From positions 682,001 through 746,000 of the forward strand of contig CATNEN010000015.1 of NCBI GenBank assembly GCA_950097015.1: a stretch of DNA of 64,000 nucleotides, read 5' to 3'. The position numbers and the translations under genes are program-made. The first letter of the stretch is position 1. Each line of letters starts with the position of its first letter. Of the stretch, positions 34,842 through 64,000 are shown piece after piece. Below the pieces are notes generated by a model. That model was not told the origin of the DNA. It saw only the letters and a list, made by a program, of their open reading frames with translations, and did not search any database. Origin of the DNA: Macrostomum hystrix. Taxonomy: Eukaryota > Animalia > Platyhelminthes.

Positions 34842-35260
34842 TCAGGCGTTGAAGTTGATGGCGTACTTCGGGTAGGCGCACTCCGCACTGCCGACTGTCC
34901 ACGGTCTGGCGCTGCTGCCATCGCCCGCACAGGGCAGCACTTTGCACAGCAGCGCCAGCCTCCCAGCCTGGCCCCGGAGCTCCGGCGTGTCGGTAAACCT
35001 CAGCTCAGCAACGGAGCCAGGAGAAAAGCCAAGCTTCATCGCCGACTCAGCCTCCAAGCTGATCGCCCAGGTGAATGCGTACAAAGGCTTGGCGGCGGCG
35101 CCGGCCTTCAATCGACAGGCGTCAAACTTGGCTAGCAGGTCGGCATTCTGGTTCACCCACACTTGCGTCACCGTGGCCTTCTGGCCTGTCAGACCTGCCA
35201 GGAACCTAGAGCTGGCGATGGACCAGTGAAGGAAGGTGGGACTGCTGGAGTCCACCTCGT
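34842..35260 (-). other. Second, degenerate PARP-fold domain at the C-terminus
   Basis: [52 protein letters not shown] aligns motif-by-motif with the first domain but lacks the H, Y and E residues. Confidence 0.7.
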
Positions 35261-38200
35261 GTCGCTGAGGCCTCTCGATGCGGGTCACACCCTCAGGCAG
35301 GCTGGTGGGTAAGGCTTTGAGCTCAGCGGAGCCGTGAACAGCATTGTAGTGCACAATGTACTTCGGGTAGGCCTGGGCCGGGTCAAACACCACGAATTCA
35401 TCGTTGAGCACGCCGTTCGTGGCGCGCGAGTTGCGCGGGGCGAACAGGGAGTCGTACTTTTCCTGCCGCATGCGCTTGAAGTTGTACGCGTTTTTGGTGG
35501 CCTGGTGCACTGTCAGGCTGCGACCTGCAAGGGGAGGACATGTTGCAGGTTAGAACCTCGGACTTAAAATCGAACTCTACGCTGGCATACACTCATGCAG
35601 GTGTGTACGTCTGCCCTGACTTTCTCATCGTCAGGCAGGGAACTACGACATTTGACTGCTGCAATTTGACTTCCACCATTTGACTGCGGAGCATTTGACT
35701 GCGGACAATTTGACTGCGGAGCATTTGACTGCGGGCAATTTGACTGCCAGCCATTTGACTGCCACAATTTGACTGCGGACAATTCCACACTTTTGGCTGC
35801 ACATTTATTGACTGCCACTTCAATTGACAGTGGAAAAATTGCATTCGACTGCGGACAAGTACATGTATAGATTTATAGATTTGGCATGTACTCATGCACT
35901 TCCTAAATTTGAAATTTGTATCCTAAATTAGACCCAGGAGCAGGATGTGAATTTGCATCCACTCCCTAGCAAAAAACCCAGTCCGGCAATTTCTAAAATT
36001 AAAAAACAGCAAAGCAAACTTCTCTGTTGCCATAAATTTAGCCTAGTTAGCCTAGGTTAGGCTAGGCCTATCATTCAAGGAAGACAGTAGCAATTCGTTC
36101 ATGCTTTTGCAACAAAGATGGTCAGACTCAGTGCAGTGGAAAATAGGGGCTATGGTGGGAGGTGGGCCCATGGTCATGTATCCAACACTGCCATCCTGAC
36201 TGTGACTCCCATCCCATTATCCCATAGCTTGCACTTTAACTGCACTGGGAGGGGAAATAAATGGATTATTACCCAGGGCAGATGAATGAAATGCGTAAGA
36301 TAATTAGATTAGTGGACAAGAGCCCGAGCTTCTGGGGGATACATTCCCAAAATCAACTAATTTCCCAAAAACATGCAAAACGCATTTCGTTTAGATGTTT
36401 ATAAATTAGTCGCAGAGCGGTTGAAACGAGGGTCACTTTAAACCCATTGCAAATTCCCATGGCTCCGTGAGGATAATTTCAATTGCAAACAATTGTCAAC
36501 AGAGGATTTTCCTTCTCTCAGAGCTCGAAATCTCAAAGATAAAAATGACTAACAAAGTGTGAGAGCAACCGTAAAATACTCATAATTGGTTGCTGAGGCA
36601 CAATTTTTCATTGACAAATTTATACTTATTTATCCGGAAATAATTATATACCTATTGCGAAGCTTTCTGGTCGTGGAGATGGAATGTTATAATGAACGAA
36701 TTTACCATTTATTCTGGTTCTGGAACTGGGGAATCAGATTGTGGCAGTCAAATGTCGGGCTCCCGTCAGGCAGTGCACACTCTCACTGTGCCTGGGAGTT
36801 TGACTCTCAAAAGTCGTAAATTGCACGATAAGCCCCCAAGCCCTCTCTCCTAGGCTGCGCCCCAAATGAATGTGGCCTCGCCGCCGAATCGAGCTTTGGT
36901 TGGAGAGTCTCGTTACCGCAATGCAATAGCAGCAAGGCTGAGCTCACCAAGCAGCACCTCGCACAGCAGCAGCATGTTGGAGCCCTTGGTGTAGATCTCT
37001 CGAGCGCTCTTGGACGAGTCAGAGGCAAAGTAGATCCCAGCGCCGTACATGCCGGCCTTCTCAGGCAGCTTGAAGCCGTTGGTGATGATGCCCTCGACGC
37101 CCTCTACTGAGGTGCCGTGGAATTTCAGCTCGCACCTGCAGAAATCAAGCTCAATTGATAGTTGGATTTCTTCGCTGTCTACTGTGAGTATCACACTGCG
37201 GTCCAGTTACCTGTCTGGCTCGTACATCATGCTGGTTCTGTAGTGCAGAAACCTCTTCCTTAGCGACGCGTTGAGCACCTTCTCAATTTTGGTGACAGTC
37301 GGATACCAGGAGTGCTCAGCCCTGATGAACTTCATCACCCGATCCTCGACGTCCAGAAACTCGGAGGCCGTGTCGCCAGTCCTTTCGAGCGGCTCCCGTT
37401 TCACGCAGCCGTCCATTCGCTGCTTGATGGCATCCAGCTCCGCCTTCGCCTCGAGTCGCGCCGCATTCTTGGCGGCTTCGCGACGTGCCTGAAGCTCCGC
37501 GGCTCGGTTAGCCTCGTCGACGCGGCACTGGGCGCAGGTCTCCGGACTGCAGGGCTGCCAGCACAGCTGCTCACACCTGTGACCGCAGCCAGGGAGGTCT
37601 CGCTCGCAGGGCTGGTAGAGTAGTCAGAGGGTTCAGCATTGAGTTGTCTGGAATGCGCTAAAATTCATTCAGACCAAAGAGCTAACCAGACTCACCTGCT
37701 TGCACTTCAGCTGGCTGACTGGCTGCCAGCACTCCTTCATATCAGGGTGACCGCATTTCTCAAAGACAAATTTAACGAGCTGCCTGCAGCGCAGCGACTC
37801 CACAGCCTCGTGACAGGCCTTGACCATTCTGTGCCCGCAGTCCGGCAAGGTCACCTCAGACCGTTCGCCGCAGCGATCGTGCGAGTGCCTCGGTTGGCAT
37901 GGCAACAAGCAGCGGTGCAGGCCGCAGTGCATCGGTGACCGGCACTCCAGGCGGCAGAAGGCGGCGCCAACGGTCGGCACCGAGGCGGCATCGACTGCAG
38001 TCAGCTGAGTTTCTGTCGGATGCATCGGACAGCGCAGCTGCAGCTCAGTGCCAACGCAGCCGGCGGTTTGCATGGAGCTGACCAGTTTGCGCCAGTGCTG
38101 CGCCTTGTGCGACAGGCAGGCCGCGTTGCCGACTAGCCAGAAGCCGCAGCGGGCGCGCGACTGGGCAACGCAGCGCCGGCTGACCTCCTTGAGGAAGCCG

Positions 38201-39670
38201 ATGTCACCATCCGAGTTGGACCGCACCAGCGACACGATGACGAAGTCGTTTTCGTCTCCCTGATAGACGTCGATGGTGTGCGCCAGGATTGGCGGCCCGC
38301 GAACGCTTGCCGAATCATCGTCGCCGGCGTCCGGAGCGGCTTCCGTAGCGTCGGTTGAGCCAGTCTTCTTGACCTTCTCCTGCCTGCCGGCCTTCCCGGC
38401 TGCAACCGGACGATGCAATTTTAGGATTTTGAAACTCGAGGATACCAAGAATGCCATAAAAGACCAACTCACCTTTGCGACACTCCTCCGGCTTGAAGTC
38501 GGGGAACAACTGCGGATGATCTGCCGCCCGCTGACGCACCAGACGGCTGATGCGGGCGGTCTGGCTGCGGTAGGCGGCCAGGATGGTGATTCGAGATGGG
38601 GCCACGCCCTGGCAAATCAGAAACAGGGCCAGGGCCACGCAGCGCTGGGCCTCCTCCTCGTTGATGTAGCTGCGATCGCCCGACTGCGGCGCCGTGTGGT
38701 CCCAGAAGAAGGCGGGCTTCACCATACAGGCGGCGGGCTGGTGGTAGCAAACAACAGCCTTGTTGTCACGCAGGTCCGGATAGATGTCGTGGAGGAACTT
38801 GGCCAGCTCGGGTCGCATGCGGTTCTGCAGCGCGAGCCGGTCATAGGCGATGCCGTTGTTCACAAGGCGCTCGAACATCGAGACGTTCAGGTCGAAGTCT
38901 CTGCCATAGACAATCAAATAACATTTAAGGTCAACTGTCAACTGTGAAGAAGGGGATCAAGATCCCGAGACTCACCTGGCCAGTTGGTGGCTCTCAGGCT
39001 GAGGTCGCAGCTGCTTGTGGTCTCCGATGAGCACAAGGTGCTGCACAGACGGGCCCAGGCAGGCCACGAGCTGCGGCTCGCCAACCTCGGCAGCCTCTTC
39101 AACCACCACCAGGCTGGGCCGCACCAGGCGCAGGATGTCGCGCTGGATGCTGGCGCCGGTGACCGTCATGCCGACGATCCGGCGGCTGCGCAGAAGGCGG
39201 GCCGTGCGGCGAAGCCGAAGCTCGCGACGCATCGCGGCAAGACTGGAGAACTCATCGATGGCTGCCTGGGGTGGGAATAGACTCAATCAGCTGTTATCCC
39301 ATCCAATCAGCTGTTATCCCATCCAATCAGCTGTTATCCCATCCAATCAGCTGTTATCCCATCCAATCAGCTGTTATCCCATCCAATCAGCTGTTATCCC
39401 ATCCAATCAGCTGTTATCCCATCCAATCAGCTGTTATCCCATCCAACCAGCTGTTATCCCCTCTAAGCTAAGAGGTTCTCACCTGCAGCTGAGGCACGCA
39501 GTCAGCGGCCGACTGCAGGAGGATGAGCTGCAGCAGCACCGCCCGCTCCTCGCTGTTCAGCGCCCACAGATCTGGCACTTTGGCCAGCTGAGCTGCCCGG
39601 GCGGCAGTGGCGGCGGAGCCTGCGCCACCACCAGTCAGCTGGTCTGGCGAGGCCAGAAACGGAGCCAGCC

Positions 39671-39708
<38 letters not shown>

Positions 39709-40034
39709 GTAAGCTGAGTGTCCCATCCGAAGCGGACAACAATGTCCTTCTCCAGGTTACCAGCGTGATCCACAAAAGCGGCCAGCCGCTCCTCCTGCTC
39801 CAGTGCCACATCAGCGTCGGCGTCAGCGTCGGCGTCAGCGTCGGCGTCAGCGTCGGCAGCGGTCGCAGCATTGCGTCGACGCGTTCGACGTTTGCGACTA
39901 GACTTTTTGGTCTGAGCAGTCTGGAGCTGTTGGGACTTGAGATTTCTGCCGCCTGCAGGCTCGAAAGCAACTTCTGGGAGCTGCTCAGCCTCCTCTTCTT
40001 CGGACAGTTCGGGCATCGGTGGCGGCGAAAGCGG

Positions 40035-40065
<31 letters not shown>

Positions 40066-43000
40066 GGCGGGCGGAAAATCTTTTCAGTCACCGAGGGGTC
40101 GGGAATCCACAGCTTCAGGGCCTGAGATTTTATATTAGGGATCCATTAGCAAATCCTTGGGATTCTCGGACACTCAATTAGCAAATCCTTGGGATTCTCG
40201 GACACTCAATTAGCAAATCCTTGGGATTCTCGGACACTCAATTAGCAAATCCTGGGGATTCTCGGACACTCAATTAGCAAATCCTTGGGATTCTCGGACA
40301 CTCAATTAACAAATCCTTGGGATTCTCGGACACTCAATTAGCAAATCCTGGGGATTCTCGGACACTCAATTAGCAAATCCTTGGGATTCTCGGACACTCA
40401 ATTAGCAAATCCTTGGGATTCTCGGACACTCAATTAGCAAATCCTTGGGATTCTCGGACACTCAATTACCAAATCCTTGGGATTCTCGGACACTCAATTA
40501 GCAAATCCTGAGAATTCTCGGACACTCAATTAGCGAATCCTTGGGATTCTTGGACACCCAATTAGGATATCCTTGGGATCATAGAACTGCATAGCGATGC
40601 ATATTCTATCCCATAATCCCAATCGCAAAGTCTCACGTCAACAAAAGCGGCAGCCAGCGGGCTCAGTCTGGTTCGAGCCTCATCGGCCAGCTGACTGATG
40701 AGGTGCGGCTTGAGCTCGCCAACCGTGTTCAGCTCGGCTTGCAGGCCCTGCTGGCGAGTCAGCAGGAAGCGGCGCAGCTGGTCCTCGTTCAGGTGCTCGG
40801 CCAGGAGCAGGGCCTGCCGGCTGAAAACCCGGTTGAAACGAGCGAACAGGTGCTGCAAATCCGCTCTGGCCCTGTCCTGCTCCTCCGACACCTGGCAAAA
40901 TGCAGGATCGGGATAAATTTGGACTATGCTCAATATCAAGTAGTCTTATCAAATCACAAAGTGTCTTCTAATCTACTCAAATTCCAACCTACCTGATTTG
41001 CTCAAATCCACACCTGTCAAATCTACTCAAATCCTGACCTGTCAAATCTACTCAAATCCTGACCTGTCAAATCTACTTCAATCCTGACCTGTCAAATCTA
41101 CTCAAATCCTGACCTGTCAAATCTACTCCAATCCTGACCTATCAAATCTACTCCAATCCTGACCTGTCAAATCTACTCCAATCCTGACCTGTCAAATCTA
41201 CTCAAATCCTCACCTGTCAAATCCACTCAAATTCTCACTTGTCAAATCTACTCCAATCCCAGCTGTCACATCTACCCAAATCCCACCTGTTAAATCTACC
41301 TAAATCCCACCTGTCAAATCTACCCAAATCGCACCTGTCGGAGCTGCTCGCCGCTGCCGCCCTCCAGCTTGGCCAGCAGGTGTCCCAGGCTGATGCTGTC
41401 CAGTTCTTTCTTGCTGCACCTGCCGCCAACCCGCAGCACCTGGTCCTCTGGGAAGTGCTTCAGTAAGTCGACCAGGAAGTCGTCCAAGGCTCGATTCTTG
41501 TAGGCCAGCACGAGAGCCGGAGGTCGGAATGTTGGCAGTGCCGTCAGCTGGCGGACGATGAGCACACCGAGGCTGCTCTTGCCAGTGCCCGGAGGTCCTT
41601 GGATGACTGCCAACCGACGATGCAGAGCGTTGCTGAAGGCTGTCTGCTGGCTTCCGTCCAGCTGGAACTGGCCTCCAATGTCCAGGGTGGGCAGCCGCGG
41701 TGGAGCCGGCCGAGTTGCGTAATACCTGGCCACATAGTCCGGTGGGTCGCGAGCTTGAGTCACGCGGGCTTTGACCAGAATGTCGGCGAAGGGCAGGCGG
41801 TCAGCATCGCAGAGCTGCAGGCCGCGCAGAACCGGCTCGCAGGCTTTGAACAGCGTTGGCGACTCGGCCATGAGCATGCCAGCCGACTGCCTTCATGGGC
41901 GGATGAGGCCGAGGAAGCTGGCTGAGACAGTTCCAGGTAGAACAGGAAACCAGCATTGCGTCAATTACCTGGCGAGCATTCGCTGGAAGGCCTCCACGTC
42001 GCTGACGGTGTTGCAGTCGTTGCAGAGCTCGATCCAGATGATTGACTCCAGCTGCAGCTGGCGCGAGTCCCTGAATGCCACGGTGGCCCACAGCAGCTGG
42101 CTGGGATCGAAGCCTCCGTCCGGGGAGACGCAGAGCAAATTGCCCGGCAACAGCTTGGAGCTGCGGTCCCACCGCTCCGCCCGGTCCCCGTTGCCCCGCT
42201 GGAAGCGCAGGCCGAGGGTCAGAGGCGAGGAGCCGCCGCCGGAGCAACTCAGGCGGACTCCGCACAGCCGGACCTCCGTGTACACCGACATTTCGCGGGG
42301 GTCAAGCACGCCGTGTTGCCAGGCACGCGTGCCCTTGACAACGCGATCGAAGCAGTCGGCGCGGAACAGCCTGAAAGGAGTGAAGGAATGAGTGAGTGAG
42401 TGAGTGAGTGAGTGAGTAAGTGAGTGAGTGAGTGAGTAAGTGAGTGAGTGAGTGAGTGAGTTAGTAAGTGAGTGAGTGAGTGAGTGAGTGAGTGAGTGAG
42501 TGAGTGAGTGAATGAGTGAGTGAGTGAGTGAATGAGTGAGTGAGTGAGTGAGGGAGTGAGGGAGTGAGTGACTGAGTGAGTGAGTGAGTGAGTGAGTAAG
42601 TGAGTGAGTGAGTGAGTGAGTGAGTGACTGAGTGACTGAGTGAGTGAGTGAGTGAGTAAGTGAGTGAGTGAGTGAGTAAGTGAGTAAGTGAGTAAGTGAG
42701 TGAGTGAGTGAGTGAGTGAGTGAGTGAGTGAGTGAGTGAGTGAGTGAGTGAGTGAGTGAGTGAGTGAGTGAGTGAGTAAGTGAGTAAGTGAGTGAGTGAG
42801 TGAGTGAGTGAGTGAGTGAGTGAGTGAGTGAGTGAGTGAGTGAGTGAGTGAGTGAGTGAGTAAGTGAGTGAGTGAGTGAGTAAGTGAGTGAGTGAGTGAG
42901 TGAGTGAGTGAGTGAGTGAGTGAGTGAGTGAGTGAGTGAGTGAGTGAGTGAGTGAGTGAGTGAGTGAGTGAGTGAGTGAGTGAGTGAGTGAGTGAGTGAG

Positions 43001-50800: not shown

Positions 50801-53800
50801 CGATGAAATGCGTTAGTATAATCGAAAAAGTTAGGCTGTTTGTCAAGGCCGAACGAGAGCTGGATCTCGACAAGATTTTGCCGCATGTTACTAAGCTCGC
50901 TGAGATCCCTAAACTGCTTGAGGCTGTATCACAATTAGATTCTAATATTCAAGATGACTTCAAATGCTGCATTCGGGCAAAGGCTGTCGATGTACTTTTT
51001 GCAGAAATAGATCTCGACAATCATCTACGCATTGGTGTTCATGAGTGGCAGCAGATTAATGAATTTATGGACACATGTGGATTTGCTGAAGATCAGAGAA
51101 AAATTGTGTGCGATGCTGTAAAAGCTGCGTGCATGAAAACCCTTTCTGTAGATTCGCCTTTGCAGGCCAGGGAAGAGTTTCAAAAGTCTGTCGCCACCTT
51201 TCTGAATGAATGCAGATTCATTGCCAGCCCTGATGAGGCTATCGAAGTTCTGAGCACTATATTTGAGTTGCAAAAGTCGCCAAAGCTGAAAACGTTTTTG
51301 GCAGAGCAGCTAAACGACCTAAAGGTTGTAAAACTTGCTTTACAAGAATCGAAGAGAGAAGCACTTGAGGTAGTCTTCACAAAAGCATTAAATCTGCTTG
51401 AAGCAAAAGGGAAGCAGGCTAACGACAAAGAAACGAAAAAATGCTGTGTTGTTCAAGACTTGCAGCTACAAATGGAGAGCGCCAAAAACACTGAGGGCCT
51501 GCAGCCACTGTGGCTTGAGGCTTTTAGAAGCTTTACTTTACAGCCACGTTGTGCAACTAAAGAGTACCTTACTGCAATCTGGCATGATTTGAAACAGCTA
51601 AGCGATCGCCCTGACGTAACAGAGCTCTTTGAAGTTTTCTATGAGAGTTGCCTCAGCCATTTGGAGAATCAGCAAACGACAAGACAAGTGGGAGACTTCC
51701 TGCTGGAAATTGATTTCGGAGAAGTATTGCAACCAACAAAGTAAGCAACTGTTCTTCACCTGCAATCCTTACCTGCAAGATGATTTTTTTAACTCAGTGT
51801 TTTAGACAGTTAGTTTTTCTCTGCACACTTTTTCTATTCTTGCGCTTTTATTCAGTTTGTAAGTACATAGACATTAAAATGATATTAAGGGCAGCAGGAA
51901 GTGACACATCTGTTGATGACACTAGACCCGCAGCCAGCGAGAAGGCAACTCTGCCCATTCTGCTAACTCCTGAGCACATACGCTCACAGATACCGTACTC
52001 AGGCACACGCTCATACAGGTGTGTACGAGCGTACATCTGCCCTGACTTTCTCATCGTCAGGCAGTGTACAATTCACCGTGCCTTGGTGGTCGGCCCTCAT
52101 GGTCGTAATTTGAATGACAAGCCCCCAAGCCTTCTTTCCGCGGCTGCGCCCCAAATGAATCGAGCTCAGGGACCTTGGTGCGGGAGGCAAACGCAAATCA
52201 CAGCTCTGCCACTCACCCGCCTACATGCACACGTTTGCTTACTAAACAGTATAAAGTGTCAGACTCCAAAAAATTGTTCGATTATCATAACATTTGCATT
52301 TCACAGGACTACTCGACTTCTTCAACAAGCCGTTTTTTCCTATCTGATCAACACTAAGGTTGCGCACCAGTCCAACCAACTAGAAGACAGACTTTTGACT
52401 ATGTTGAAATGCCCTACGGCCTGGTGTTGGTTGGAGGCTACGAGGGAACACAGCGAAGACATGGAAAGATTACTCGACTGCGAAAACATGCAGCAGTTAA
52501 AAAGCTGGCTGAGTAAACTTAAAGCAATGGAATTCACAGTGCCCCAGCTTGAAACTTTGAAGGCAAAGTTCAAAGATGAGCTTCTGAACATGTTTGATCG
52601 CTTCCTCAGTGCGTGCCGGATTTCAGAAGATCGCGGGATAAAAAGTCTGATTGACAAGATGACTGAGACGAGCGACAGGTACCAAGCTGACGTGGAAAAT
52701 GCAAAGAAAGTACTTGATTGGCTGTCCTCTTTCAGTGAAACGCTTGACGATTTACAAGTTTATCAGAATAGATTCAAGGACACTACTTCAGAAGTATGCA
52801 ACTGCATAAATCTAATGGCAGGACACAACCTTTTTAAATGTGTCTTTCAAGAGTATTACTCCATTTCTCGTGAGCTAAGTGACCTCTTAGAGTCGACAGT
52901 TTTCACTGCAATTTACTCAAGCAGATGTTTTGATGTTACTGAAAGCGTTAGTGAAGTGTTTGGAATAGTTAAACCTGCAATTTCGCAGTACAAGAAATTT
53001 TTGCAAGAAACCATCTCATACAAGAGACTTTCGGATGTTCAAGGGAAATTTTCCCCCGACACAGACATCGATTCCGAACAAAATCTTGCTCGCAGGTTTC
53101 TCGACCAGGAGCCTGAAGCCCTGATGGATACAGCTTTGGTTGAAAATTTAATGCACCTAAAGACATGGAAGCTGTATTGCGATCTGCTTTTAAAGTCGCC
53201 ATTGCGGCATCTTTGTGAAAATCCCGTGCTGCAGGCTAGTAAGCATTATTTAGAAAACTGTGCCGATGATGCGCTCGTGACTGATTTTAATGAGGCGGCT
53301 CTCCAACTTAAACAAATGTGTTTGCCTCTCTCAACAAATCATTGGAACATTCTCACAGCCCTGTGTGATAGAAAGGAATTATTTGAATTTCTAATTGCCC
53401 AGATCAACTCTGACTTTCAACAGCTTTTTGATGCGGCCAACGATGAAGACTCAGAGGAAGTCAGCTTCTCACACATCAATGCTCTCATAAAGCTTCAAGA
53501 AATGTTCAGGCTTCTCATTAATAAAGTGCAGACTGGCGAAGGCATGATGAAGAACAAAACAACAATGGAGGAGCTAGCGATGGCCCTTGATTTTGGTATT
53601 GAATGCTCAGATCAGGAGACCCCAGACGGACGAGCCAAAGACGCAATAGATTACATCGAGATCTGCCACAGCCATCTCAGAGCGATTCAGGCTTTGCACG
53701 ACAGCCTATCGTCTCGTGGCGACTCTTCTAGAAAGCAAGCCCTAACCTTGGTCCAGTGCTTGGATGATGAGAAACTTGATTTTGCGATCGAAATTAGCGA

Positions 53801-56800
53801 CAGTGAATCTACGTGCACATTGATGGATGTTGAAGTACTCGAGGACTGGCCATTGGCTAAATTAATTGAGCACAGATGTCGAGTGCTGATGATCCTGGGA
53901 TCTTCGTATTCCCTTGTCGATGAAAACGACCGCATCCAGTTAAAAATATTTGTGGAAATAGTAGACGTACTGGAGAAGGTAAGTGATTCCATAAATCAAA
54001 TATCTGGTATTTCATTTATGTAAAAATCAAATAGGATTTTTAGGACTATTTAAGACACTAAGCTAGCGAGCTTTTACGAGCCCTGATTCTAACCCGAAGA
54101 TCCAGATTCTCGTTATAAATCAGTAGACTTTTTGTTTGCGCCTTTTATTAATTTTAAGTATTTTTTTACAATTAAGAACCTCTAACTAAATTTCGTAAAA
54201 TATTGCATGCAATAAATTTCTAATCCCCAGGTTTTTCTACTGTACACAAAGCTCCGCGCAGTTGGCCATCCACTTCACAACGAAGCTAGTGTTCAGGGCT
54301 CTGCGAAAGGTTTGAAAGATCGCGAGGGTGAGTGTCGCCAGCATCTGGAGACTTGGGAGGCTGTGCTGCGTGATGCGAGGCAGAGGAAACCTCTACTGAA
54401 CTATTTGTTTGGAGCCAACCTGCTCTGCGTGCACCACCATTTTCTAACGCACTCGCGTGACATTGATATCAAGCCCATTCTTCGCTTCATGAATCTGAAT
54501 GCTGAGAGCGGCGTCAGGCAGTCGCAGGTTCAGTTTAGCTTGGACCAGGTCCGGAAAATGCAGATTAAAGAGCAAAAGGAATGCCTAATGAATCATCTGA
54601 TGTCACTGGCTGACGAGCTGGCTAAGCTGGATGGCCTGCCTGACCACCAGCTTTACTGTGCGCAGCATCTGCCCAGTTCGCCACTGTGTGTTCAGCAAGG
54701 GCGACTCATGGTCTTACGAGTCGATCCGAGCCACGAGCCGCATTCTATCAGAGCGTTTCTCAGTGTCTGGCGTCACTCTCAGGTAATTTCTAATTGCTGA
54801 AAGGAACGAACCTACATGAGAAGTCCATTTGGGTGTCCATACTAAACATATTTCATTTGTATTGTTTGTTTACTTGATATAGTGTTCTAGTGCATTTAAA
54901 GTCACCGTATTTATTGCCCTACATTCATGTAGGCTTTCAGGATAGATGTAGAGTTTATTTAATTTACATTCTACGCTATAAGTTGATTTGTTTTGCAATA
55001 AGCTTGAATCACCAATCCTTGCAGTCCTACAAGCCGCAACCATCAGAGATTTTATTCTGTTCTGCGGACACCGCCGAGGAAGAAATCTCTCTTATCCTGC
55101 GCCGATGCGCTCAGAGTCGTGACAGAGTTCACTACATCATCTGTACAGAGCTGCTCAGTCAGCGACTGCTCAACCACCTGGCTGCTGGAATTCTCTACCT
55201 GTGCGATGCAGGCAACCTTGGGCGCCTGGCTGTGTTCTGCCGAGCTGCCATCAATCACCGACTGCTCGGAATCTTCAGGGACCAGTGTCAACAGCTGCAG
55301 CCGGAATGGGACTCGAATTCACAACTTTCTGAGTCACTCGGCGCCATCTGTGACAACTCTGTCACTGTTGTTCGATCTGAGAGGGCCGGCTGTGGCAAAA
55401 CGGAGATGGTGCGCAGGCTGGCTGCCGACACGGAGAGCAGTCTGAGGTGCGTTCACGTCAGCGGCAGAGTCAATAAGCTTGATCTCGTGGCGAGGCTTCG
55501 TGATCTGGATGAAACTCACCTGCTGCATCTGGACATTGGTTGGGTTGAGGATGCTGGTGGACTAGAGACTTTGCTGTTTGAGGCCCTGCTTACTGGAATG
55601 CTTTGCCACTCCAGCAGACCGTTGATTTTCAAGCCTGGTCGAGTTGTCATCGAGTTGGCAAACAGCGCTAACGATGAGTTGGCAGAGCAGTTCGTACTAT
55701 TCAACCGTCTGCCGTCACGGCATGTGGTGATGATTCGATGGCAAAGCCTGGATGACCTTCTGGTATCGCGCGAGCCAAGGAGCCCAGTTCAGATGGTTGC
55801 GAAGTACAAGCAAGCTCTTGACTTAAGAAGCCTAGACTCTACAGAAGTTTCATTGGACAATGTACTGGAACCTGATGAATGCCGCCGCTGGTTGAAGCGC
55901 GCACTGGACCCCTTGGAAGAGCAGTCCTACCTGACTGTAACAGCCACTCTTCGAGTTTTGGCGGATCAGCTGAAGAAGCTGTCCTCGAGTGCTTTCTTCA
56001 AGATCTCCGGTGTTGCAGAAACGTTTGGCCGCAACGCGTCGCCAACAATCAGATCAGATCTGGTTCGGCTTCTTTTTACCTCAGTTTTGCGGCTGATGTG
56101 CCGATCGGTGGCCCCGTCTAAAGCGAAGCAAGCCAAGTCTAAGCTGGGCGAGTTTGGCTCGGATGAATCAGTGAAGCGATTTGAAGGCTTCCTAAGCTGG
56201 GAGTCCTTCGATCACCTGTCACCGGTGTTTCAGAAGCAGGACATTGCCGCAGTGGAGTTGGTTTATCGCAGTTTACGCGATGTTCCCGATGAAATCCGTC
56301 GTCTGTTCGAGCGGAATATGAGCGCAGGCCGCCTTGTTGACTACGCTGAGATGAAGCAGGCGAAGCTGCTAGAGAAGCTAGTGCGGATCGCTGGCCGCGG
56401 GAATCCTGGACACCGTCCACCGGGACTGTCGGAAGAAGACGACGACGAGCGTGGCGGGAGCGGGTTGTATGCCATCACGGCCGACAACTTTCTGAAGATG
56501 GTTCTCATCAGTCTCCGCATCGACTGCGATGTTCCTGTGCTGATTATTGGAGAGACTGGTTGTGGAAAAACTAGCTTGGTTCGATTCTTGAGCAAGGTGA
56601 GTCTTCAGTCTCACAATTCAGCTGTCTGTACTATGCGTAAGTTTTTCAATATTCAACAAATTTTCACATTTTTTTCGCGAACAGGTTCACGAAGCTCGCC
56701 TAATAGTGCTAAACTTTCACGCGGGCACAACGCAGGAGCGGATAGTCGATGCGGTGAAGAGGGCTGCCAATGAGGCCAGGAATCTGATTTTACAGCGCAG

Positions 56801-59800
56801 AGAAGGTGAAAAGCTGCGGGACACAAAGTCCGTATGGATGTTTTTAGACGAAATCAACACCTGCGACCACCTGGGCATGCTGAAGGAGCTCATCTGTCAC
56901 AGACGCCTGCTAGGGGCTCCGCTGCCCCCCAATCTTCGCTTCTTGGCCGCTTCAAATCCCTACAGGCTAAGGGACCCGGAGGCTGCCCTGACCGCCGGAT
57001 TCCGGCTAGCCGAGAGGGAGCACGACCGGATGAGGCACCTGGTTTACCGGGTGAACCCCCTCCCAGAGTCCATCCTGGACCTCGTTTGGGACTTTGGTCG
57101 GCTGCAGGATGCGGATGAGATGGAGTACATTAAGCGGATGCTTCGAGACCAGCTGCCGGAGATGCAGACTCAGTTACTGGAAACTTTAGCCACGGCGGTG
57201 TGTAGATCCCAGCGTTTCATTCGGCTGCTGGAGAAGACGGAGTACGCAATCAGCCTCCGGGATGTTCGTCGTTGCTGCGAGTTCATTGCCTTTTTCCGCT
57301 GGTTCTACGACCTAAAGGACAAGGAGTGCGGGAAGATGCCCAGAGCTAACCCTCATCGGCAGCATCACCCTCATCTGCCGCTAATCATGTCGCTGTACGT
57401 CTGCTATTATGTGCGCATCCGCTCTGCAGCCAAGCGGACTGAATACGCGAATACCATCTTGTCCCTCCTGGCTGCTGAGGCTGAGGTAAGAATGCACGAG
57501 TAATATTTTTATCGGAATGGAATCTATACGTCCATTTCGGGCAAACGCTTTTGACGGCTAGCATTTTGTGAGGTTTTAGTTTCTGTTTACATGTAATTTA
57601 CAAGTAGTTCCTGTTGCCTTGTAGTCAGATTGTATACATTGAGTATTTTCGAATACCTAGTTCAGTCTATGAGTTCTTACTCTCTTTGAGAACAAGATTT
57701 TTTTAGTTACCTAATGCAGAGACCGTCAGGACCAGACTGTTAAACAGTTTCATCTTGCGCACACCTGGGAGATCTGCACTGTTTGAGCGTTCTAGATGTT
57801 CTAGACCCGTTAGAGTCTCCCGGAGATTCTCTTAACCGGTAAAGTCTGATACATTTCCCGTCCCATCCCAGGACATTATTCGCAAGGATCAAGAGGACAT
57901 CATAGGTCGCATGGCGCTGCCAGAAAACGTGGCCCGCAACGCAGCCCTGTTGGAGAATGTGTTCATCCTGCTGTGCTGCGTGTACAACAAGGTTCCAGTG
58001 TTCCTGGTCGGCAAGCCCGGCTGCTCCAAGAGCCTCGCAGTGACGCTCCTCCGAAGCAACCTGCGTGGCCGCGACTCCGGCGACCCATTCTTCAAGGCGC
58101 TGCCCGCCCTGCGCTTCTTTTGCTACCAGGGCTCGGAGGCCTCCACTTCGGACGGCATCTACAAGCTGTTCCAAAGGGCCACCCAGAAGGCACACGAAGA
58201 GTCTAAAGAGGAATACCGGTGAGAGAAGAACTGATTTGAAGTAGGATGTCTTTTCTTAGCTGGTTACCCGTACTGTAATTAATAGAAATGACACCTTACC
58301 CGAGTGGGTCAGATGTGCAGTCAGTCGCACAGCCGACTCTTCAAAGGTTCAGTCTGTACAGCTGTTCAGTCCATGGATGCGAGCCACCACACTCTCACCC
58401 ATTTTGCAGCTGGGGGAATTCAAGCACTGGGGAATTTAAGTGTCTTGCTTAAACAAAAATTCTCTTGGGCTGAGATTCGAACTTGCAACCTCTCGGTCTC
58501 CTCCAATCACTGGGCTACTCCTCAGCATCCGTGCGCACACTCCTCAGCTTTTCTTTGTCATTCCGCAGCTACGTAGTTCTGCTTGACGAGATTGGGTTGG
58601 CCGAGAAGTCGCGCCACAATCCGCTGAAGGTGCTCCACAGCCTGCTGGAGCCGGAGGAATCCGAGTTCACCTGCAAGGCTCGCGTAGCCGTTCTCGGTCT
58701 CTCCAACTGGGCGCTGGACCCGGCCAAGATGAACAGGGCGGTGCACATCTCCCGGCCTGAAATGACCTCTGATGAGCTGCTCATCACTGGCACCGCCATC
58801 GTGCTGGAGGGCAGTGAAAAGCAGGGCGAAGGCAATGCTGGTGGTCGAATCGACAAGGACGATATGGAGAAAATTGCTACGGCCTGTCATGCGTACTTCA
58901 GCGAACAGCCTGAAGAGGACTTCCACGGACTGAGGGATTACTATTACCTGGTGAAGTTCCTGGCCAAGGAGAAGCTCAACATGCAGCTGAACAAGCTGGG
59001 CATCTTGAGCCGCGGCCTTGTGCGCAACTTCTCCGGGCTAAAGCAGCCGTATTTTCTCGAACACTTTGTGTGCGAGTACTCTGGCCTGGACTCTGCTTAC
59101 TCAGAAATGATTAGCCAGATGGACAAGGTAGGACGTGACCAGCCATTTGTTGCACACACCTACTGGTTCATTATTAGCATTAATTACTCTAGCCGTCAAA
59201 CCTGTCATAAAAATAACAAACGAAAAGCACTGAAATCATTGTTTTGTGGCCAGAGAGGAACATTTTGCGCTTATGATATTTATATGTTTTTATTTTACTC
59301 CGATTTTAAGGTGTCAGTGCTGATGGAAAGCCTGTCCGATAAGTCAGCACGCCACTTAATGCTGATCACGGACACTGACAGAGACCTGGACCTGCTGGCT
59401 CACGTGCTGCAGCAGAAGGCCCGCCGTTTCCGAGTGCTTCACGGTAGCACTTATGAGCGGGACCAGCTAAGCGAGCAGTTCGCGCTGCGAAAGCTGCACG
59501 AGGTGATGATGTGCATGGAGAACGGCATAGTCGTGCTGTTCAAGGACTTCGAGCTCGTCTATGGCAGCCTGTACGACATGCTGAACCAGAACTACTCAGA
59601 GTACAACAAGCGCCGCTACTGCCGCGTTGCTATGGGAACTCAGGCCAACAAGAACTGCTCTGTGGACGATGCCTTCCGCTGCGTGGTGCTAGTGAGGGCG
59701 GACACCCTCGAGCGCGTGGACAGGGCCTTTCTCAACCGCTTCGAGAAGCAGACCTTCGGCTTCGGAGATGTGCTCAACGCTGACCAGATGCGAGCTGCCA

Positions 59801-62800
59801 GTGAAGTGCAAGACAGCTTTGTTGCTAAGGCAACCAGGTCTGATGAATGCAGTTTTGGCCTTGGATTTTTACAATAATAATAAATAAATGCTTCTTGATT
59901 GGAGATTAGGTCCTCAAGTTTTTTAATTGGTGATCAACACGTTTCTCATCGTGCTAAAATGCGGATTTTATTGAGAGGTTAAGGCGCTTTAGCAGTAGAA
60001 ATCTGTATTTGTGTATCAAGCCAGAGTTCATGATTTTTTTCTCCAAACTGATCCCATTGCCAGCATCAACGGCCTGGCTTGGCAGCAGAAGGGCGACCGC
60101 TTGCAGTTTTCTGCTCAGGAGATATTCTGTGGCTACCACCCGGAGCTGCTGGGCGCCCATCTGCTGGCGGCGGGCAGCGGTGACTCTTCCGAGGAAGCGG
60201 TCAGCTGGCTGCCACGTCTGCTGCTGTCGCAGGCCTTCCCGGATGCCGTGCTGCGCCTGTCTTACAGCGACCTGCCAGCAGAGAGGCGGGAGTTGCTGCA
60301 GCGAGGGTACTTCAACAGCCTCTCAGACGTCTCACTGTCCCGCCACGTTGCTAAACAACTGGCCGAGGGTATCGTCAGCGGGACCATTGTGTACACCCGC
60401 ACCCGCATGGAGGACGCGGGCTGGAGACAGCAGCTCGGTGTCAAGTGCACAGTGTTGCGACTGGTTGATTTCATGGGAGAGGATGAGCTCAGGTGAGCCA
60501 GTTTTGCATCTTTGTCGTCATGAACTCTGTTAATACCTCTGGGTGCTGTTTGCAAGGAACGCTTGCCATATGTTGGAGTTGCACGAATTGTGCAATATAA
60601 AATATTCATAGTGCTCAGGCATTAAGTAGCAAAGTACAAAGTACCCGAAGACAGGAAATGGCTCGGGGCTGCTCAGTGTGGTCGGCCAGCCCGTCCTATA
60701 GCTTTGTCTTCTGTGGAAAAGAATGTGGTTCGTCTTGTCACCTGAAGGAACTTGACGAGCCGTCTGATGCATCAAAGGATGCTGTCGGGCTCGCAAACCT
60801 CATCGGTAGACTAGTTGGGCTGTAGATCTCTGTTAAAGTAAAAGCAGCGACAGGCGAAATTCTCAGCAACTTCGTTGTCAAGCTCGCCGAAGGGGCAGAG
60901 TTCACTCTTAAGATCGACCTGGAGAAAGCAGTGCCTGTCGAGGGCGCCTCGCGGTTTTGGTTCAGAGGATGTTTTTAGCCTGGTCTGTCCCAGCTGTCCC
61001 CATTGAGGGACATAGTAGAGTTAGTTCAAGGGAGCTTGATGCCCTTAAAGACTTTTGACCGACTGGTCGGGAGTTCGAATCTTCGTCTGCAGAAAGAATT
61101 GTCTTTAAGCAAGACTCTACATTCTCTAAAGCTGAGTTTACCTGGCTGTAAAATAGATATTTGCGTTAGCGGCGTGCTACCAGTCCACTTGGGCTATAGG
61201 TTGCATTCTATGTTCGCATTTCTCCTTGTTATTTGCAGTCAGTACAATAGTCCTAACAATCCTTTCGTGCTAGGCTCATACTTCTCTCTGTTATGAACTC
61301 TACGAACTTCGACGACGTTGTTTAAAATATTTCGAGATATAAAAAATGGTCATTCTCCTGTGTGCCAGTTATTTCAGTTAGTTAGCTTCGAATATCTCAA
61401 CGCCTTTCGAAACCACAACGCATACTCAACAGGGATGAAGTCACGGCGGCTCTTCGTGACAATGTCGGCGGAGTCGTGGCTCTGAGCTGTCGGCCCTCGG
61501 TTGACTCTGACACTGCTCCACAGCTGCGCTGGCTGCTGGAATCACTGATGGAGGGCGCGAAGGGCCCGTTAGTTCTGCTCTGGATCTTCCACCTTGGCGG
61601 AGGCGGAGGTGTCTCAGAAGGCCGTCAGACCTGGCAGTGGTCTCCGCTGCTCTCACGCTGGCGTCTCCTCTGCCTGGAGTCGCTCGGCGAGGCGGATTCA
61701 GACAGCGCCGCCACCCTGCGCGCTTTGGTCTGCAGCCGCTCTGTCAGCGAGGTACTGGCCGACTGTCCAGCCTTAGTTCGAAGTCGAACAGCTGATAATC
61801 TACAGGACTCGGTGATCGAGGTTCTTGAACCTGGACCGCGGCGTGAAGCCGCCTCCCGTCTGCTGCGCAACCGCCCTGAACTCATAGAAGCCCTGGTGAA
61901 AGCCGCGATCCAGCGAGCTGCGCGCCATGACGGTGACAGCATCGACGTAGAGGCGCCGGAGTTTTCGCCGGGACACTGGATGGTCTCCCTCGCCCGCGAG
62001 TCCGCGCAACTCGCCAGATTTGCCACGCTTGCCGATTTTGCCTTCACCCATCTAGCGAATCGCGTCCATGATGGCCTTCTAGACCTTCTGCGGCTGCTGC
62101 GCGATGCCCGCGCCTTCGATGTAGCTGACGTCACTCTTGACGCCCGAACCCTCGATTGCCTCGTACAAGGCCTCAGCCATCTCGTGCAAGTTCAGAGACA
62201 TCCCGTCAATCTTAGCATCGGAGCCGGCCTTCGTTTCCCGCTAAGCGGCTTTGTTTTTGCCGACCTGCAAGCAGCTGCGGCCGCTGCCGAAGAAAAATGC
62301 GCCGCTGCAGATGGCGGAGCGGACGTGGAGGAAGCTGTGGCAGAGGCGACTCTGGTCGCTCTGAAATTCTGGTTGGATGTTTTTGGTCTGAAAGACGATC
62401 AATCCGAAGCGGCTGGCCTACTTGCAGGTGATCTACTCTCTATGGCAACCGAGTCGGCCTGCGGCTACGACTTTTCGAATGAATTCAAAGGTGTTATGAT
62501 TGCTCTGCCAGCTCTTTCTGCGGTCGCTGACGTTGGACCAGTGTGGGCGCCGGTTGCTGCTGCTATCGCCCTGGCTGCGTCCCTGACAACAACACTGAAG
62601 CTCTGGTCGCTTGTTTCTGTCGCCTGTCCAAGCCTTCGATTCGCTGAGCTCACCGAATTGGAAGATAGTCCGCCTGCGCGCAGCGAGCTGACTGAGCTGC
62701 TAGTCGGTGCCCTACTGCCGAGCAAGGAGAACCTGCAGAGGTTTGGCTTGGCTGACTCTGTAGCCAAGTGGGACTGCATAGCAGCCAGAGCTCTACTCAT

Positions 62801-64000
62801 GCTGGCAGACTCGGAATGCGCTTCTGTCGTAAGGCTGTCGCATTTTACACAGTGTTGAATTATAATACAATACAATACAATAATAACTTAGGCCAGCTGT
62901 GCAGTTCCAAAAGATTCTGCAGCTGTGCCGTCCATGGACTGGGAGGCCACCACACCCAGCTATAATTTGTAATCTCATACTGGTAAACGTTTTACAGGTA
63001 GAGGGAAATGAAGCACTAAGGAATTTAGTATCAAAAGCAAATAGTTTCCTTTGAACTGGGATGCAAACTCCCGACCTATCGTGGGAATTCAAATGCTCTA
63101 ATCAATGGGCTACAATCTCCTTTGTGGCTTTGTACTCAGCATGATGCAGATTTGATTCTCCTAGTGCATCAGATTATTCTTTTCCGAAACCCACAGCCGG
63201 TCACTGAGCAGTTGAGCATGTGCCGCCTATTCACTGCGACGGTCCTGCTGCCCTTCAACCTGCCGTCGATCTGCCTGCACAAAGTGCAGAGCTTTCTCTC
63301 TGAGCACACTGGCCAGACTGACTCTCTCTTCAGTGAGTCTGGCGTCTCCAGGATAGAAAATCTGCTGTCAGAGTCTCTTCCAGAGCTACAGGGACTACCA
63401 GTGTCGGAAGAAGACTTGCAGCAGCAGCTGCAATGCCTTTGGAGCCTGTACCTGCATCAGGTTGTCCAGCGCGGAGCTCTGACCGCGGGCCTAGCCAAGG
63501 TCTTTCTTCAAAAGATAGCGGAGAACCAACTGCCGCTTGGCTGCTTTGTGCAGCTGTGGAGCGCTGTCTTTAGCAACGGGGCTGATGAAAGCGATTCAAC
63601 CCGGGCTGCCATTCTAGACTGGGTTGATGAACGATTGAAGATTTCTGCCGGCAAAGAACTGGCGCAGCTTGTGACTGCCCGCATGCCCGGCCATCTGCTG
63701 ACTTCCTGCCCGCCCATCAGCAGCCAATCGCTCCGGGGCGTCGCCTGTACAGCCAGCCCAGGTGTTCCTGAACTTCTTCAACTGCAAGCCTTCAAGGCGA
63801 CCGCTGCTCGTACATTCCATCTCAGTGAAGGTCAACTCACTCTCACTGATGATGGACGGGGTCTTGTTCAGATGATCAGAGATATCGAGCCCCTGCGACA
63901 CGGCCATCCCCTGGTGATCGCTTTCGCACAAGCTGCTCTTCCACTCGCGCCCCTGGCTGATGTCGTGGACTTGCTAGACCGTGAGCTGTCTCTCAGCGTC
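47852..64000 (+). CDS. RNF213: RNF213/mysterin-like giant AAA+ ATPase, partial (start not placed; runs off the window end), >=14 exons, >=3795 codons
   Basis: Exons 47852-48177, 48386-48815, 49661-49717, 49828-51740, 52307-53978, 54231-54782, 55025-56596, 56685-57485, 57872-58218, 58569-59127, 59311-59837, 60064-60492, 61433-62828, 63197->64000, all with phase-compatible GT..AG junctions. RNF213 motifs: PSEILFC...[31 protein letters not shown]...[102 protein letters not shown]. Confidence 0.9.
48436..48750 (+). repeat. 27-bp coding minisatellite ([10 protein letters not shown] x ~11-12) in an N-terminal exon of the RNF213-like gene
   Basis: aatccgacaggccagactgggcctcag / ...cccttaa. Lies in frame between a strong acceptor (tttaccag, 48385) and a GTTAGT donor (48816). 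Confidence 0.8.
48840..49474. mobile_element. Complete CAG...CTG MITE (635 bp, ~45-bp TIRs) in an RNF213-like intron
   Basis: cagtaggactaccaagccattttgccgcccgttttt...aaaaacgggcggcaaaatggcttggtagtcctactg. Flanks ttat / ttaa. Same family as 15312-15909. Confidence 0.88.
51885..52220 (-). mobile_element. SINE copy (family of 30889-31253) in an RNF213-like intron
   Basis: Reverse complement of the 30889-31253 body (ctagtgtca..., gcgtacggtatctgtg..., aaggtccctgagctcgattc). It explains the non-homologous N-terminus of ORF 51780-54023. Confidence 0.78.

What the first reader, a model, noticed from the sequence alone, without database searches (positions are those of the whole stretch)
34842..64000. 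Head-to-head ZNFX1-PARP / RNF213-like pair: candidate two-component cell-autonomous immunity locus
Seen: the two genes diverge from a ~2.8-kb AT-rich interval (45043-47851). Established: RNF213 and ZNFX1 are the two families that define the RZ finger; RNF213 ubiquitylates bacterial LPS, and both are interferon-induced in mammals, where they are not neighbours. Inference: a co-regulated module pairing an RNA-sensing ADP-ribose writer with a giant AAA+ ubiquitin ligase. ADP-ribose-primed ubiquitylation, as in the PARP/DTX and tankyrase/RNF146 systems, is a testable possibility.
Basis: partly seen in the sequence, partly recalled or inferred. Interest (0 to 1): 0.85.

Follow-up and report, generated by a model that had tools for sequence, protein, structure and literature searches.

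The report
Divergent ZNFX1-PARP and RNF213-like genes
In a Macrostomum flatworm, a ZNFX1-type RNA helicase fused to a PARP domain and a giant RNF213-like ATPase gene sit head-to-head and are both transcribed, but nothing I could test shows they work as a two-part immune system, and the pairing is absent at the orthologous gene of the closest annotated relative.

Summary
The minus-strand gene (34845-45047) is a true ZNFX1-helicase/PARP fusion. The plus-strand gene is RNF213-like and starts at about 47136, not 47851. RNA contigs show a missed first exon (47136-47275; ATG 47243). The untranscribed AT-rich gap is therefore 2.09 kb, not 2.8 kb.

The "two-component module" reading is not supported. 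The gene groups 100/100 with M. lignano BOX15_Mlig005943g1, which has no ZNFX1 or PARP coding sequence within 10 kb. Neither do seven other RNF213-like loci. No ADP-ribose reader was found in the window part or in full-length M. lignano homologues. Those homologues lack a RING. At the RZ position they keep only a four-cysteine knuckle, without the catalytic Cys/His. The window gene's own C-terminus lies beyond base 64000.

The ZNFX1-PARP mRNA begins at a splice acceptor with 22 unmatched letters, probably a spliced leader, so a bidirectional promoter cannot be shown.

New here: an ISRE-like element, GAAAACGAAAAACGAAAA, sits just upstream of the RNF213-like transcript start. The identical 18-mer sits upstream of the M. 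lignano orthologue.

Earlier scan notes report ZNFX1-PARP fusions and RNF213-like genes elsewhere in this genome, but not this pairing.

The parts
34845..45047 (-). ZNFX1-helicase/PARP fusion gene, about 12 exons and roughly 1,850 aa. Stop codon at 34842-34844, ATG at 45042-45040.
   Evidence: Pfam; PDB ZNFX1 match; PARP matches; open segments; approximate splice sites. Only exon 1 has RNA support here.
44512..45047 (-). ZNFX1-PARP exon 1. Its 5' end is a splice acceptor (ttgcag|CACAATGG) 5 nt before the ATG. RNA contigs carry 22 further letters that do not lie on the stretch laid.
   Evidence: records 8, 14 and 20 (record positions 23-559 lie on 45047-44511, no mismatches); sequence. This fits spliced-leader trans-splicing, which affects 20-30% of Macrostomum genes (PMC10468722, PMC8629364).
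41968..42370 (-). Exon encoding the ZNFX1 signature domain.
   Evidence: PF25396, E 1.6e-10; exon start.
41575..41598 (-). Helicase Walker A, GPPGTGKS. Motif II VVEEAAE is at 39086-39106 and YQGDE at 38251-38265.
   Evidence: AAA_11 and AAA_12 hits.
37210..37623 (-). Single exon joining the last NFX1-type zinc finger (CGHRC, 37573-37587), a coiled coil and the region leading into the PARP domain. This is the fusion point.
   Evidence: Stop-free stretch; no Pfam domain of its own.
36916..37206 (-). PARP catalytic core with His (ELKFHGT, 37111-37131) and Tyr (GAGIYFA, 37024-37044).
   Evidence: PF00644, E 2.6e-16; PARP3, PARP2, PARP15 and tankyrase matches; motif positions.
34845..35549 (-). Last exon. 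It holds the PARP C-terminal part with Glu (NDEFVVF, 35385-35405), then a second stretch of about 150 aa that repeats the 'AYPKY(I/A)' ending and matches no Pfam family.
   Evidence: PF00644 weak hit, E 0.0029; no family for 34845-35300.
45048..47135 (.). Untranscribed AT-rich spacer of 2,088 bp between the two mRNAs. No Rfam family and no annotated-type gene.
   Evidence: Zero RNA depth in four runs; GC 0.33; Rfam none.
47105..47122 (-). ISRE-like tandem GAAA element, GAAAACGAAAAACGAAAA, 14-31 nt upstream of the 5'-most RNA contig ends of the RNF213-like gene.
   Evidence: Unique in the window, 0.01 expected. The identical 18-mer is at L001 9889-9906, 95 nt upstream of the orthologue's ATG, in a promoter that otherwise does not align.
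47136..64000 (+). RNF213-like giant AAA+ gene, running off the window end. It covers residues 1 to about 3830 of the 4,732-aa M. lignano orthologue. RNA-defined exons: 47136-47275, 47834-48177, 48386-48813, 49659-49717, 49804 onward.
   Evidence: RNF213 in PDB; tblastn of P0252; RNA joints, all GT..AG; open frame from ATG 47243; tree.
56549..56572 (+). First AAA P-loop, GETGCGKT. It aligns to the RNF213 stretch that carries the same GETGCGKT motif. Walker B FLDEINT is at 56841-56861.
58010..58033 (+). Second AAA P-loop, GKPGCSKS. Walker B LLDEIGL is at 58579-58599.
48381..48831 (+). Coding 27-nt tandem repeat ([10 protein letters not shown], about 15 copies) in exon 3.
   Evidence: family D1; in frame; NQPVQTGTP repeats in P0252.
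48835..49479 (.). MITE-like element with 51-nt terminal inverted repeats, inside intron 3.
   Evidence: pair I1, 96% complementary. RNA depth reaches about 900 against about 25 on neighbouring exons, with many loose ends, so it is a multi-copy element.

Best explanation
These are two separate, intact, transcribed innate-immunity-type genes that lie back-to-back in this Macrostomum species. The juxtaposition is lineage-specific and does not look like a conserved two-part system.

Gene 1 is a ZNFX1-family SF1 RNA helicase. It has the ZNFX1 domain, the helicase core and the NFX1-type zinc-finger stalk. Its C-terminal RZ/Miz ubiquitin-ligase end is replaced by an H-Y-E PARP domain plus a second unassigned domain. 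It most likely binds RNA and ADP-ribosylates targets itself (inferred).

Gene 2 is the orthologue of M. lignano BOX15_Mlig005943g1. It is an RNF213-like AAA+ machine with two intact Walker A/B pairs and a short N-arm. Its promoter carries a conserved ISRE-like GAAA repeat, so an IRF-type factor may drive it (inferred).

The ZNFX1-PARP mRNA gets its 5' end by splicing, probably from a spliced leader. Its promoter lies somewhere in the 2.09-kb spacer and could share regulatory DNA with the neighbour. A biochemical hand-off from ADP-ribose to ubiquitin is not indicated.
For: - Gene identities.
- Fusion within one exon.
- Both genes transcribed and spliced, with a silent gap between them.
- Open frame from ATG 47243.
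- Orthology: the window gene is sister to the P0252/P0001/P0151/P0152 clade, support 100/100, 73% identity over 1,297 columns.
- No ZNFX1 or PARP coding sequence within 10 kb of the orthologue or of seven other RNF213-like loci. There are no N gaps in the M. lignano upstream flanks.
- No ADP-ribose reader in the RNF213-like exons or in the M. lignano proteins.
- The rest of the window is not an immune cluster. It holds a PKA regulatory subunit, transposases, an EGFR-like ectodomain and WSC genes.
- Conserved ISRE-like element.
- Diverged IRF homologues are reported in flatworms (PMC13563047).
Against: - With about 5 ZNFX1-PARP and about 4 RNF213-like genes (counts from unchecked scan notes) among roughly 37,000 genes, immediate adjacency by chance is about 1 in 1,000. 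This figure is post hoc.
- The two families are linked by the RZ finger and by interferon induction in mammals.
- The gap is short, has no other transcript, and could hold a shared control region.
- The M. lignano flanks reach only 10 kb in a repeat-rich genome, so a more distant neighbour is not excluded.
- The window gene's own C-terminus was not seen.
Confidence: 0.6

Rival explanations
1. Co-regulated divergent pair. The 2.09-kb spacer is one control region, possibly IRF/ISRE-driven, that switches both genes on together during infection. The two proteins then act independently.
For: The gap is short and silent. A conserved ISRE-like element sits at the RNF213-like start. The ZNFX1-PARP 5' end is a splice acceptor, so its true start may lie deep in the spacer. 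Contig depths of the two genes rise and fall together in three libraries: 14.6/28.9, 13/22.8 and 7.6/9.1.
Against: Three libraries of different size are no test of co-regulation. The element lies 2.06 kb from ZNFX1-PARP exon 1. It is conserved in M. lignano, where no ZNFX1-PARP neighbour lies within 10 kb, so it belongs to the RNF213-like gene. Elsewhere the spacer has only two chance-level GAAANNGAAA cores.
Confidence: 0.25
2. The ZNFX1-PARP protein writes ADP-ribose on an RNA-associated target, and the RNF213-like protein reads or ubiquitylates that mark, as in PARP9/DTX3L or tankyrase/RNF146.
For: The H-Y-E triad is present in the PARP domain. RNF213 ubiquitylates non-protein substrates, and DELTEX ligases ubiquitylate ADP-ribose (papers listed). 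The two genes are adjacent.
Against: No WWE, macro or DTC domain was found in the window part or in M. lignano full-length homologues. None of 228 long homologues has a RING. The RZ position in the M. lignano orthologue lacks the nucleophile Cys and the IGG..NH base. Adjacency is not conserved. The paper search surfaced no title or abstract linking RNF213 to ADP-ribose-dependent ubiquitylation; the papers were not read.
Confidence: 0.05
3. Assembly artefact. The two genes were joined by a misassembly in the AT-rich spacer.
For: The spacer is AT-rich and the genome is rich in repeats. The best DNA holder may be the assembly's own source.
Against: All 279 sampled 31-mers across 44700-47400 are present in a DNA run. 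No large repeat lies in the spacer. RNA contigs match both flanks without mismatches.
Confidence: 0.03

Closest known systems
Human ZNFX1 (NFX1-type zinc finger-containing protein 1; PDB 9q9z)
   Same: ZNFX1 signature domain, SF1 helicase core and NFX1-type zinc-finger stalk.
   Different: Human ZNFX1 ends in a Miz-like domain plus an RZ finger that form a bi-catalytic E3 (bioRxiv 10.1101/2025.10.14.682297). Here there is no RZ pattern on either strand of the window. The C-terminus is a PARP domain plus a second unassigned domain.
Mammalian RNF213 (PDB 6tax, 7oik, 8s24)
   Same: Dynein-like AAA core with two P-loops and Walker B motifs. A profile of the C-terminal halves of this invertebrate family, including the M. 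lignano orthologue, matches chain positions 3621-5235 of human RNF213 entry 8s24 at E 4.5e-108.
   Different: The N-arm is much shorter: the first P-loop is at about residue 2190 of 4,732 in P0252, by my own recollection against about 2420 of 5,207 in human. No RING is found in any of 228 homologues. The RZ finger is degenerate in the Macrostomum proteins. The window gene's own C-terminus was not seen.
M. lignano BOX15_Mlig005943g1 (PAA56905.1; P0252) and its near-identical copies A0A1I8JA77, A0A1I8JDC3 and A0A1I8HL83
   Same: Orthologue or co-orthologue: same clade at 100/100. It shares the N-terminus MxxxTxLKLxL, the same 9-aa coding repeat and the identical 18-nt promoter element.
   Different: No ZNFX1-PARP gene lies within 10 kb upstream or downstream.
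PARP9/DTX3L and tankyrase/RNF146 writer-plus-E3 systems
   Same: A PARP-family writer and a ubiquitin-ligase-family protein are both present.
   Different: Those E3s carry an ADP-ribose-binding DTC or WWE domain, and none is detectable here. Physical and functional coupling is known for those pairs and untested here.
Vertebrate ISRE / IRF-E elements (GAAANNGAAA cores) in interferon-stimulated gene promoters, RNF213 and ZNFX1 included
   Same: Tandem GAAA repeats with 2-3 nt spacers right at the transcript start, conserved between two species.
   Different: No interferon is known in flatworms, and their IRF homologues are diverged (PMC13563047). Binding is untested, and the element could instead be a core-promoter feature.

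Membership tests
ZNFX1 family | ZNFX1 signature domain upstream of the helicase | tested here: met
   PF25396, E 1.6e-10, above the curated cut-off.
ZNFX1 family | UPF1-like SF1 helicase core (AAA_11 and AAA_12) with Walker A and motif II | tested here: met
   GPPGTGKS and VVEEAAE.
ZNFX1 family | NFX1-type zinc-finger stalk after the helicase | tested here: met
   phmmer match to human ZNFX1 residues 1266-1450, E 2.4e-24; CGHRC-type fingers.
ZNFX1 family | C-terminal RZ finger (C-x3-H-x6-C-x8-C-x2-C-x8-H) | tested here: not met
   No match to the pattern in any frame of the window. A PARP domain occupies the C-terminus.
PARP (ARTD) catalytic domain | PF00644 fold with the H-Y-E triad | tested here: met
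   E 2.6e-16. His 37111-37131, Tyr 37024-37044 and Glu 35385-35405 motifs. Activity was not tested.
RNF213 family | Dynein-like AAA core with two nucleotide-binding modules | tested here: met
   RNF213 chains are the top PDB hits, at 5.6e-34 and 1.3e-13. Walker A and B pairs.
RNF213 family | E3 shell and C-terminal domain after the AAA core | tested here: inconclusive
   This part lies outside the window. In the M. lignano orthologue, three collinear segments match the family tail profile at 4.7e-07, 9.5e-06 and 1.4e-05. That kind of profile matches the human RNF213 E3 module and C-terminal domain at 4.5e-108. Single-sequence searches of that tail find nothing.
RNF213 family | RING finger | tested here: not met
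   Tested by proxy only. None of 228 long homologues matches a RING pattern, the M. lignano orthologue included. The window's own C-terminus was not seen.
RNF213 family | RZ finger with catalytic Cys and His | tested here: not met
   Tested by proxy only. P0252 has RCARC-(20)-CPLC aligned to the nearly invariant Cys columns. It lacks the CPNGH, GxCG and IGGxNH features seen in canonical members.
ADP-ribose-dependent ubiquitylation pair (PARP/DTX, tankyrase/RNF146 type) | E3 partner carries an ADP-ribose reader (WWE, DTC or macro) | tested here: not met
   No such Pfam hit in the ten RNF213-like exon translations or in P0001, P0002, P0151 and P0152.
ADP-ribose-dependent ubiquitylation pair (PARP/DTX, tankyrase/RNF146 type) | Physical or functional coupling of writer and ligase | not testable with these tools
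   Needs co-IP and in vitro assays.
Bidirectional-promoter gene pair | Divergent transcription starts within about 1 kb | tested here: inconclusive
   The RNF213-like 5' end is at 47136-47143. The ZNFX1-PARP 5' end at 45047 is a splice acceptor with 22 unplaced letters. The gap is 2,088 bp.
Bidirectional-promoter gene pair | Arrangement conserved in related genomes | tested here: not met
   None of four M. lignano RNF213-like loci, the orthologue included, has the partner within 10 kb.

The most novel reading that the evidence does not exclude
The pair is a flatworm antiviral module switched on from one IRF/ISRE-type control region. An RNA-sensing ZNFX1-PARP would mark targets with ADP-ribose, and the RNF213-like AAA+ machine would act on them. 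That would imply that the IRF-RNF213/ZNFX1 regulatory link predates interferon. A weaker and more likely form is only that RNF213-like genes in Macrostomum are driven through a conserved ISRE-like element.
Probability: 0.08. Interest if true: 0.75.

Novelty: new member of a known kind. Interest (0 to 1): 0.35.

Why it matters
If the two genes really worked together, this would be a natural experiment linking the two RZ-finger families, and ADP-ribosylation to RNF213-type ligases. The present evidence does not carry that.

Three things remain useful:
- A clean, RNA-supported 5' structure for both genes.
- The point that Macrostomum RNF213-like proteins, like most of their invertebrate relatives collected here, lack a RING and mostly lack a canonical RZ active site.
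- A short, conserved ISRE-like promoter element. It offers a simple test of whether IRF-type control of RNF213 is older than interferon, in an animal where transgenesis and RNAi exist.

Tried and rejected
- Reciprocal synteny from the ZNFX1-PARP side failed. The longest stop-free piece (315 aa) found only 253-522-aa fragments from unnamed sources, because of the search tool's length window.
- A search for the C-terminal part of the window species' RNF213-like protein found nothing.
- A single-sequence PDB search of the M. lignano C-terminus found nothing. A family profile was needed.
- The ESM Atlas look-up of that tail gave only generic helical scaffolds at scores of 0.64-0.67.
- UniProt's names for the M. 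lignano copies, 'Poly [ADP-ribose] polymerase' and 'CARD domain-containing', could not be reproduced with Pfam or phmmer. P0152 is fully collinear with P0252, so it is not a merged gene model.
- No Pfam family was found for the ZNFX1-PARP N-terminus, for the second C-terminal domain, or for the RNF213-like N-terminus. The N-terminal '[15 protein letters not shown]' only looks like a cold-shock motif by eye.
- Rfam found nothing in 45000-49900.
- tblastx found no collinearity between the M. lignano flanks and the rest of the window.
- I rejected co-expression as evidence, because three contig depths do not test it.
- Read laying was kept under 6,000 letters.


Full report
**What is there**

The window comes from a Macrostomum-type flatworm. 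The nearest database proteins are all from M. lignano, at 60-85% identity. RNA and DNA runs of one coded organism hold the sequence without mismatches. The years of those runs fit the published M. cliftonense and M. hystrix genome and transcriptome work (PMC10468722), but the species was not identified.

**The minus-strand gene (34845-45047)**

- It carries the ZNFX1 signature domain, AAA_11 and AAA_12 helicase halves, and a PARP catalytic domain.
- Its helicase C-terminus plus zinc fingers match human ZNFX1 best among solved structures, E 2.4e-24.
- The PARP core matches PARP3, PARP2, PARP15 and tankyrase.
- His, Tyr and Glu motifs of the catalytic triad are present.
- A single stop-free exon, 37623-37210, holds the last NFX1-type finger, a coiled coil and the start of the PARP region. 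This is therefore one fused gene, not two neighbours.
- No RZ-finger pattern exists in any frame of the window.

**The plus-strand gene**

- Exon translations hit the mouse and human RNF213 AAA core as top PDB matches, at 5.6e-34 and 1.3e-13.
- Two Walker A/B pairs are intact.
- In a tree of the AAA core, the window gene is sister to the M. lignano P0252/P0001/P0151/P0152 group (100/100). It is separate from a second Macrostomum subfamily made of P0002, P0154 and P0003.
- P0252 (PAA56905.1, 4,732 aa) aligns to the window from its first residue to about residue 3830. About 900 residues of the window gene therefore lie beyond base 64000.

**Transcripts and the gap**

I laid spliced RNA contigs of three libraries on 44400-50300.

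- The RNF213-like mRNA begins at 47136-47143.
- Its exon 1 runs to 47275, followed by a GT..AG intron to 47834. Further exons are 47834-48177, 48386-48813, 49659-49717 and 49804 onward.
- The frame is open from ATG 47243. The N-terminus reads MEKNTHLKLYL, against MDMKTQLKLFL in P0252.
- The ZNFX1-PARP contigs cover 45047-44511 and then carry 22 letters that lie nowhere on the stretch.
- Position 45047 follows a ttgcag acceptor, 5 nt before the ATG.
- In Macrostomum, 20-30% of genes receive a 35-nt spliced leader (PMC10468722, PMC8629364). That is the likeliest source of the 22 letters, but I could not read them.
- Between 45048 and 47135 there is no RNA in any run. The spacer is 2,088 bp, AT-rich, and has no Rfam match.
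- A DNA run holds every sampled 31-mer across it.

**Is the pairing conserved?**

I fetched 10 kb on each side of eight RNF213-like genes:

- the M. lignano orthologue (L001);
- three other M. lignano paralogues (L002-L004);
- Branchiostoma lanceolatum RNF213 (L006);
- three intron-poor environmental eukaryote contigs (L005, L007, L008).

tblastn with all twelve ZNFX1-PARP exon translations found nothing in any of them. The annotated neighbours are unrelated: MFS_1, Spy1, HTH, TerD, ubiquitin and reverse transcriptase. The M. lignano upstream flanks have no gaps.

Scan notes (unchecked) list ZNFX1-PARP genes at three or more other places and RNF213-like genes at two or more other places in this genome. 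No note pairs them.

Two limits apply. Ten kilobases is short in a repeat-rich genome. I also could not start from the M. lignano ZNFX1-PARP side.

**Does the RNF213-like gene have an E3 module or an ADP-ribose reader?**

- Within the window, no Pfam family beyond AAA P-loops is found.
- The M. lignano full-length copies likewise show no RING, RZ (PF20173), WWE, macro or DTC domain.
- A profile of 70 family tails matches the P0252 tail in three collinear segments, so a divergent E3-shell/C-terminal region is kept.
- A 29-sequence tail alignment that includes P0252 matches chain positions 3621-5235 of human RNF213 entry 8s24 at 4.5e-108.
- None of 228 long homologues matches a RING pattern.
- At the RZ position a minority are canonical (CPNGHxYxIGxCGxP...CPxC..IGGxNH). 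Most have only CxCG...CPxC.
- P0252 has RCARC-(20)-CPLC on the nearly invariant cysteine columns. It lacks the nucleophile cysteine and the histidine base defined for ZNFX1 and RNF213.
- Ligase activity of the Macrostomum proteins is therefore doubtful on sequence grounds. The window gene itself remains unseen at that end.

**An unexpected promoter element**

- The 17-mer GAAAACGAAAAACGAAA occurs once in the 64-kb window, against 0.01 expected. It lies at 47106-47122, 14-30 nt upstream of the RNF213-like transcript ends.
- The same sequence plus one further A (18 nt) occurs once in the 44.5-kb M. lignano locus, 95 nt upstream of the orthologue's ATG. The surrounding promoter does not align.
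- A paralogue has GAAATCGAAAA about 165 nt upstream of its start.
- The repeat contains the GAAANNGAAA core of vertebrate ISRE/IRF sites (my own knowledge).
- Diverged IRF homologues are reported in planarians, and an IRF-like gene is discussed for Schistosoma (PMC13563047; PMC2194728, listed, not read).
- Because the element is kept in M. lignano without a nearby ZNFX1-PARP gene, it belongs to the RNF213-like gene and is not evidence for a shared switch.

**Verdict**

The two genes are new members of known kinds. According to earlier scan follow-ups, which I did not re-test beyond this locus, the ZNFX1-PARP fusion is widespread in databases.

The pairing looks lineage-specific. The proposed ADP-ribose-to-ubiquitin relay lacks its defining parts where I could look. 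Shared regulation remains possible but untested.

I put about 0.6 on independent genes in a lineage-specific juxtaposition, 0.25 on shared regulation only, 0.05 on a true two-component pathway and 0.03 on an assembly artefact.

Noticed in passing
window 47105-47122 (minus strand); L001 9889-9906: ISRE-like tandem GAAA element, GAAAACGAAAAACGAAAA, just upstream of the RNF213-like transcript start. It is identical at the same place upstream of the M. lignano orthologue, and unique in both loci (0.01 expected in the window). A paralogue (L002, about 9833) has GAAATCGAAAA.
   Followed up: partly
window 48835-49479: MITE-like element with 51-nt terminal inverted repeats (96% complementary) in intron 3 of the RNF213-like gene. 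RNA contig depth reaches about 900, with many loose ends, so it is a transcribed multi-copy element.
   Followed up: partly
window 48381-48831: A 27-nt tandem repeat that looks like a microsatellite but is coding. About 15 copies of [10 protein letters not shown] sit in exon 3, in frame by RNA evidence. M. lignano P0252 has the equivalent NQPVQTGTP repeats.
   Followed up: yes
window 45047 (minus strand): ZNFX1-PARP transcripts in three libraries begin with 22 letters that do not lie on the locus, joined at a ttgcag acceptor 5 nt before the ATG. This is probably the Macrostomum spliced leader. The letters themselves were not shown to me.
   Followed up: partly
P0252 residues 4037-4075; alignment A2: Across 29 RNF213-like tails, the RZ position is canonical in a minority and reduced to a CxCG...CPxC knuckle in most. 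None of 228 long homologues has a RING. The wider 'RNF213-like' family may largely lack the two known catalytic zinc modules.
   Followed up: partly
P0152, P0001, P0151 (M. lignano): UniProt names these RNF213-like proteins 'Poly [ADP-ribose] polymerase' or 'CARD domain-containing protein'. Pfam at E up to 0.1 and phmmer with this window's PARP pieces find neither domain. P0152 is collinear with P0252, so it is not a merged model. This is unexplained.
   Followed up: partly
window 44977-44997 (minus strand), ZNFX1-PARP N-terminus: The N-terminal '[17 protein letters not shown]' resembles a cold-shock-domain RNP motif by eye. Pfam finds nothing, even at E up to 5.
   Followed up: partly
window 43330-44510 and 42371-43050 (minus strand): The first two ZNFX1-PARP introns are almost entirely microsatellite ((PSLPA)n-like and (THSL)n-like when translated). 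They create long false ORFs of 325-365 aa.
   Followed up: no
window 9574-10647 and 23480-24253: Two DDE_3 transposase ORFs (one also with HTH_32). The same part of the window holds a PKA regulatory-subunit gene, an intronless EGFR-like ectodomain ORF and two WSC-domain ORFs. The neighbourhood is not an immune gene cluster.
   Followed up: partly
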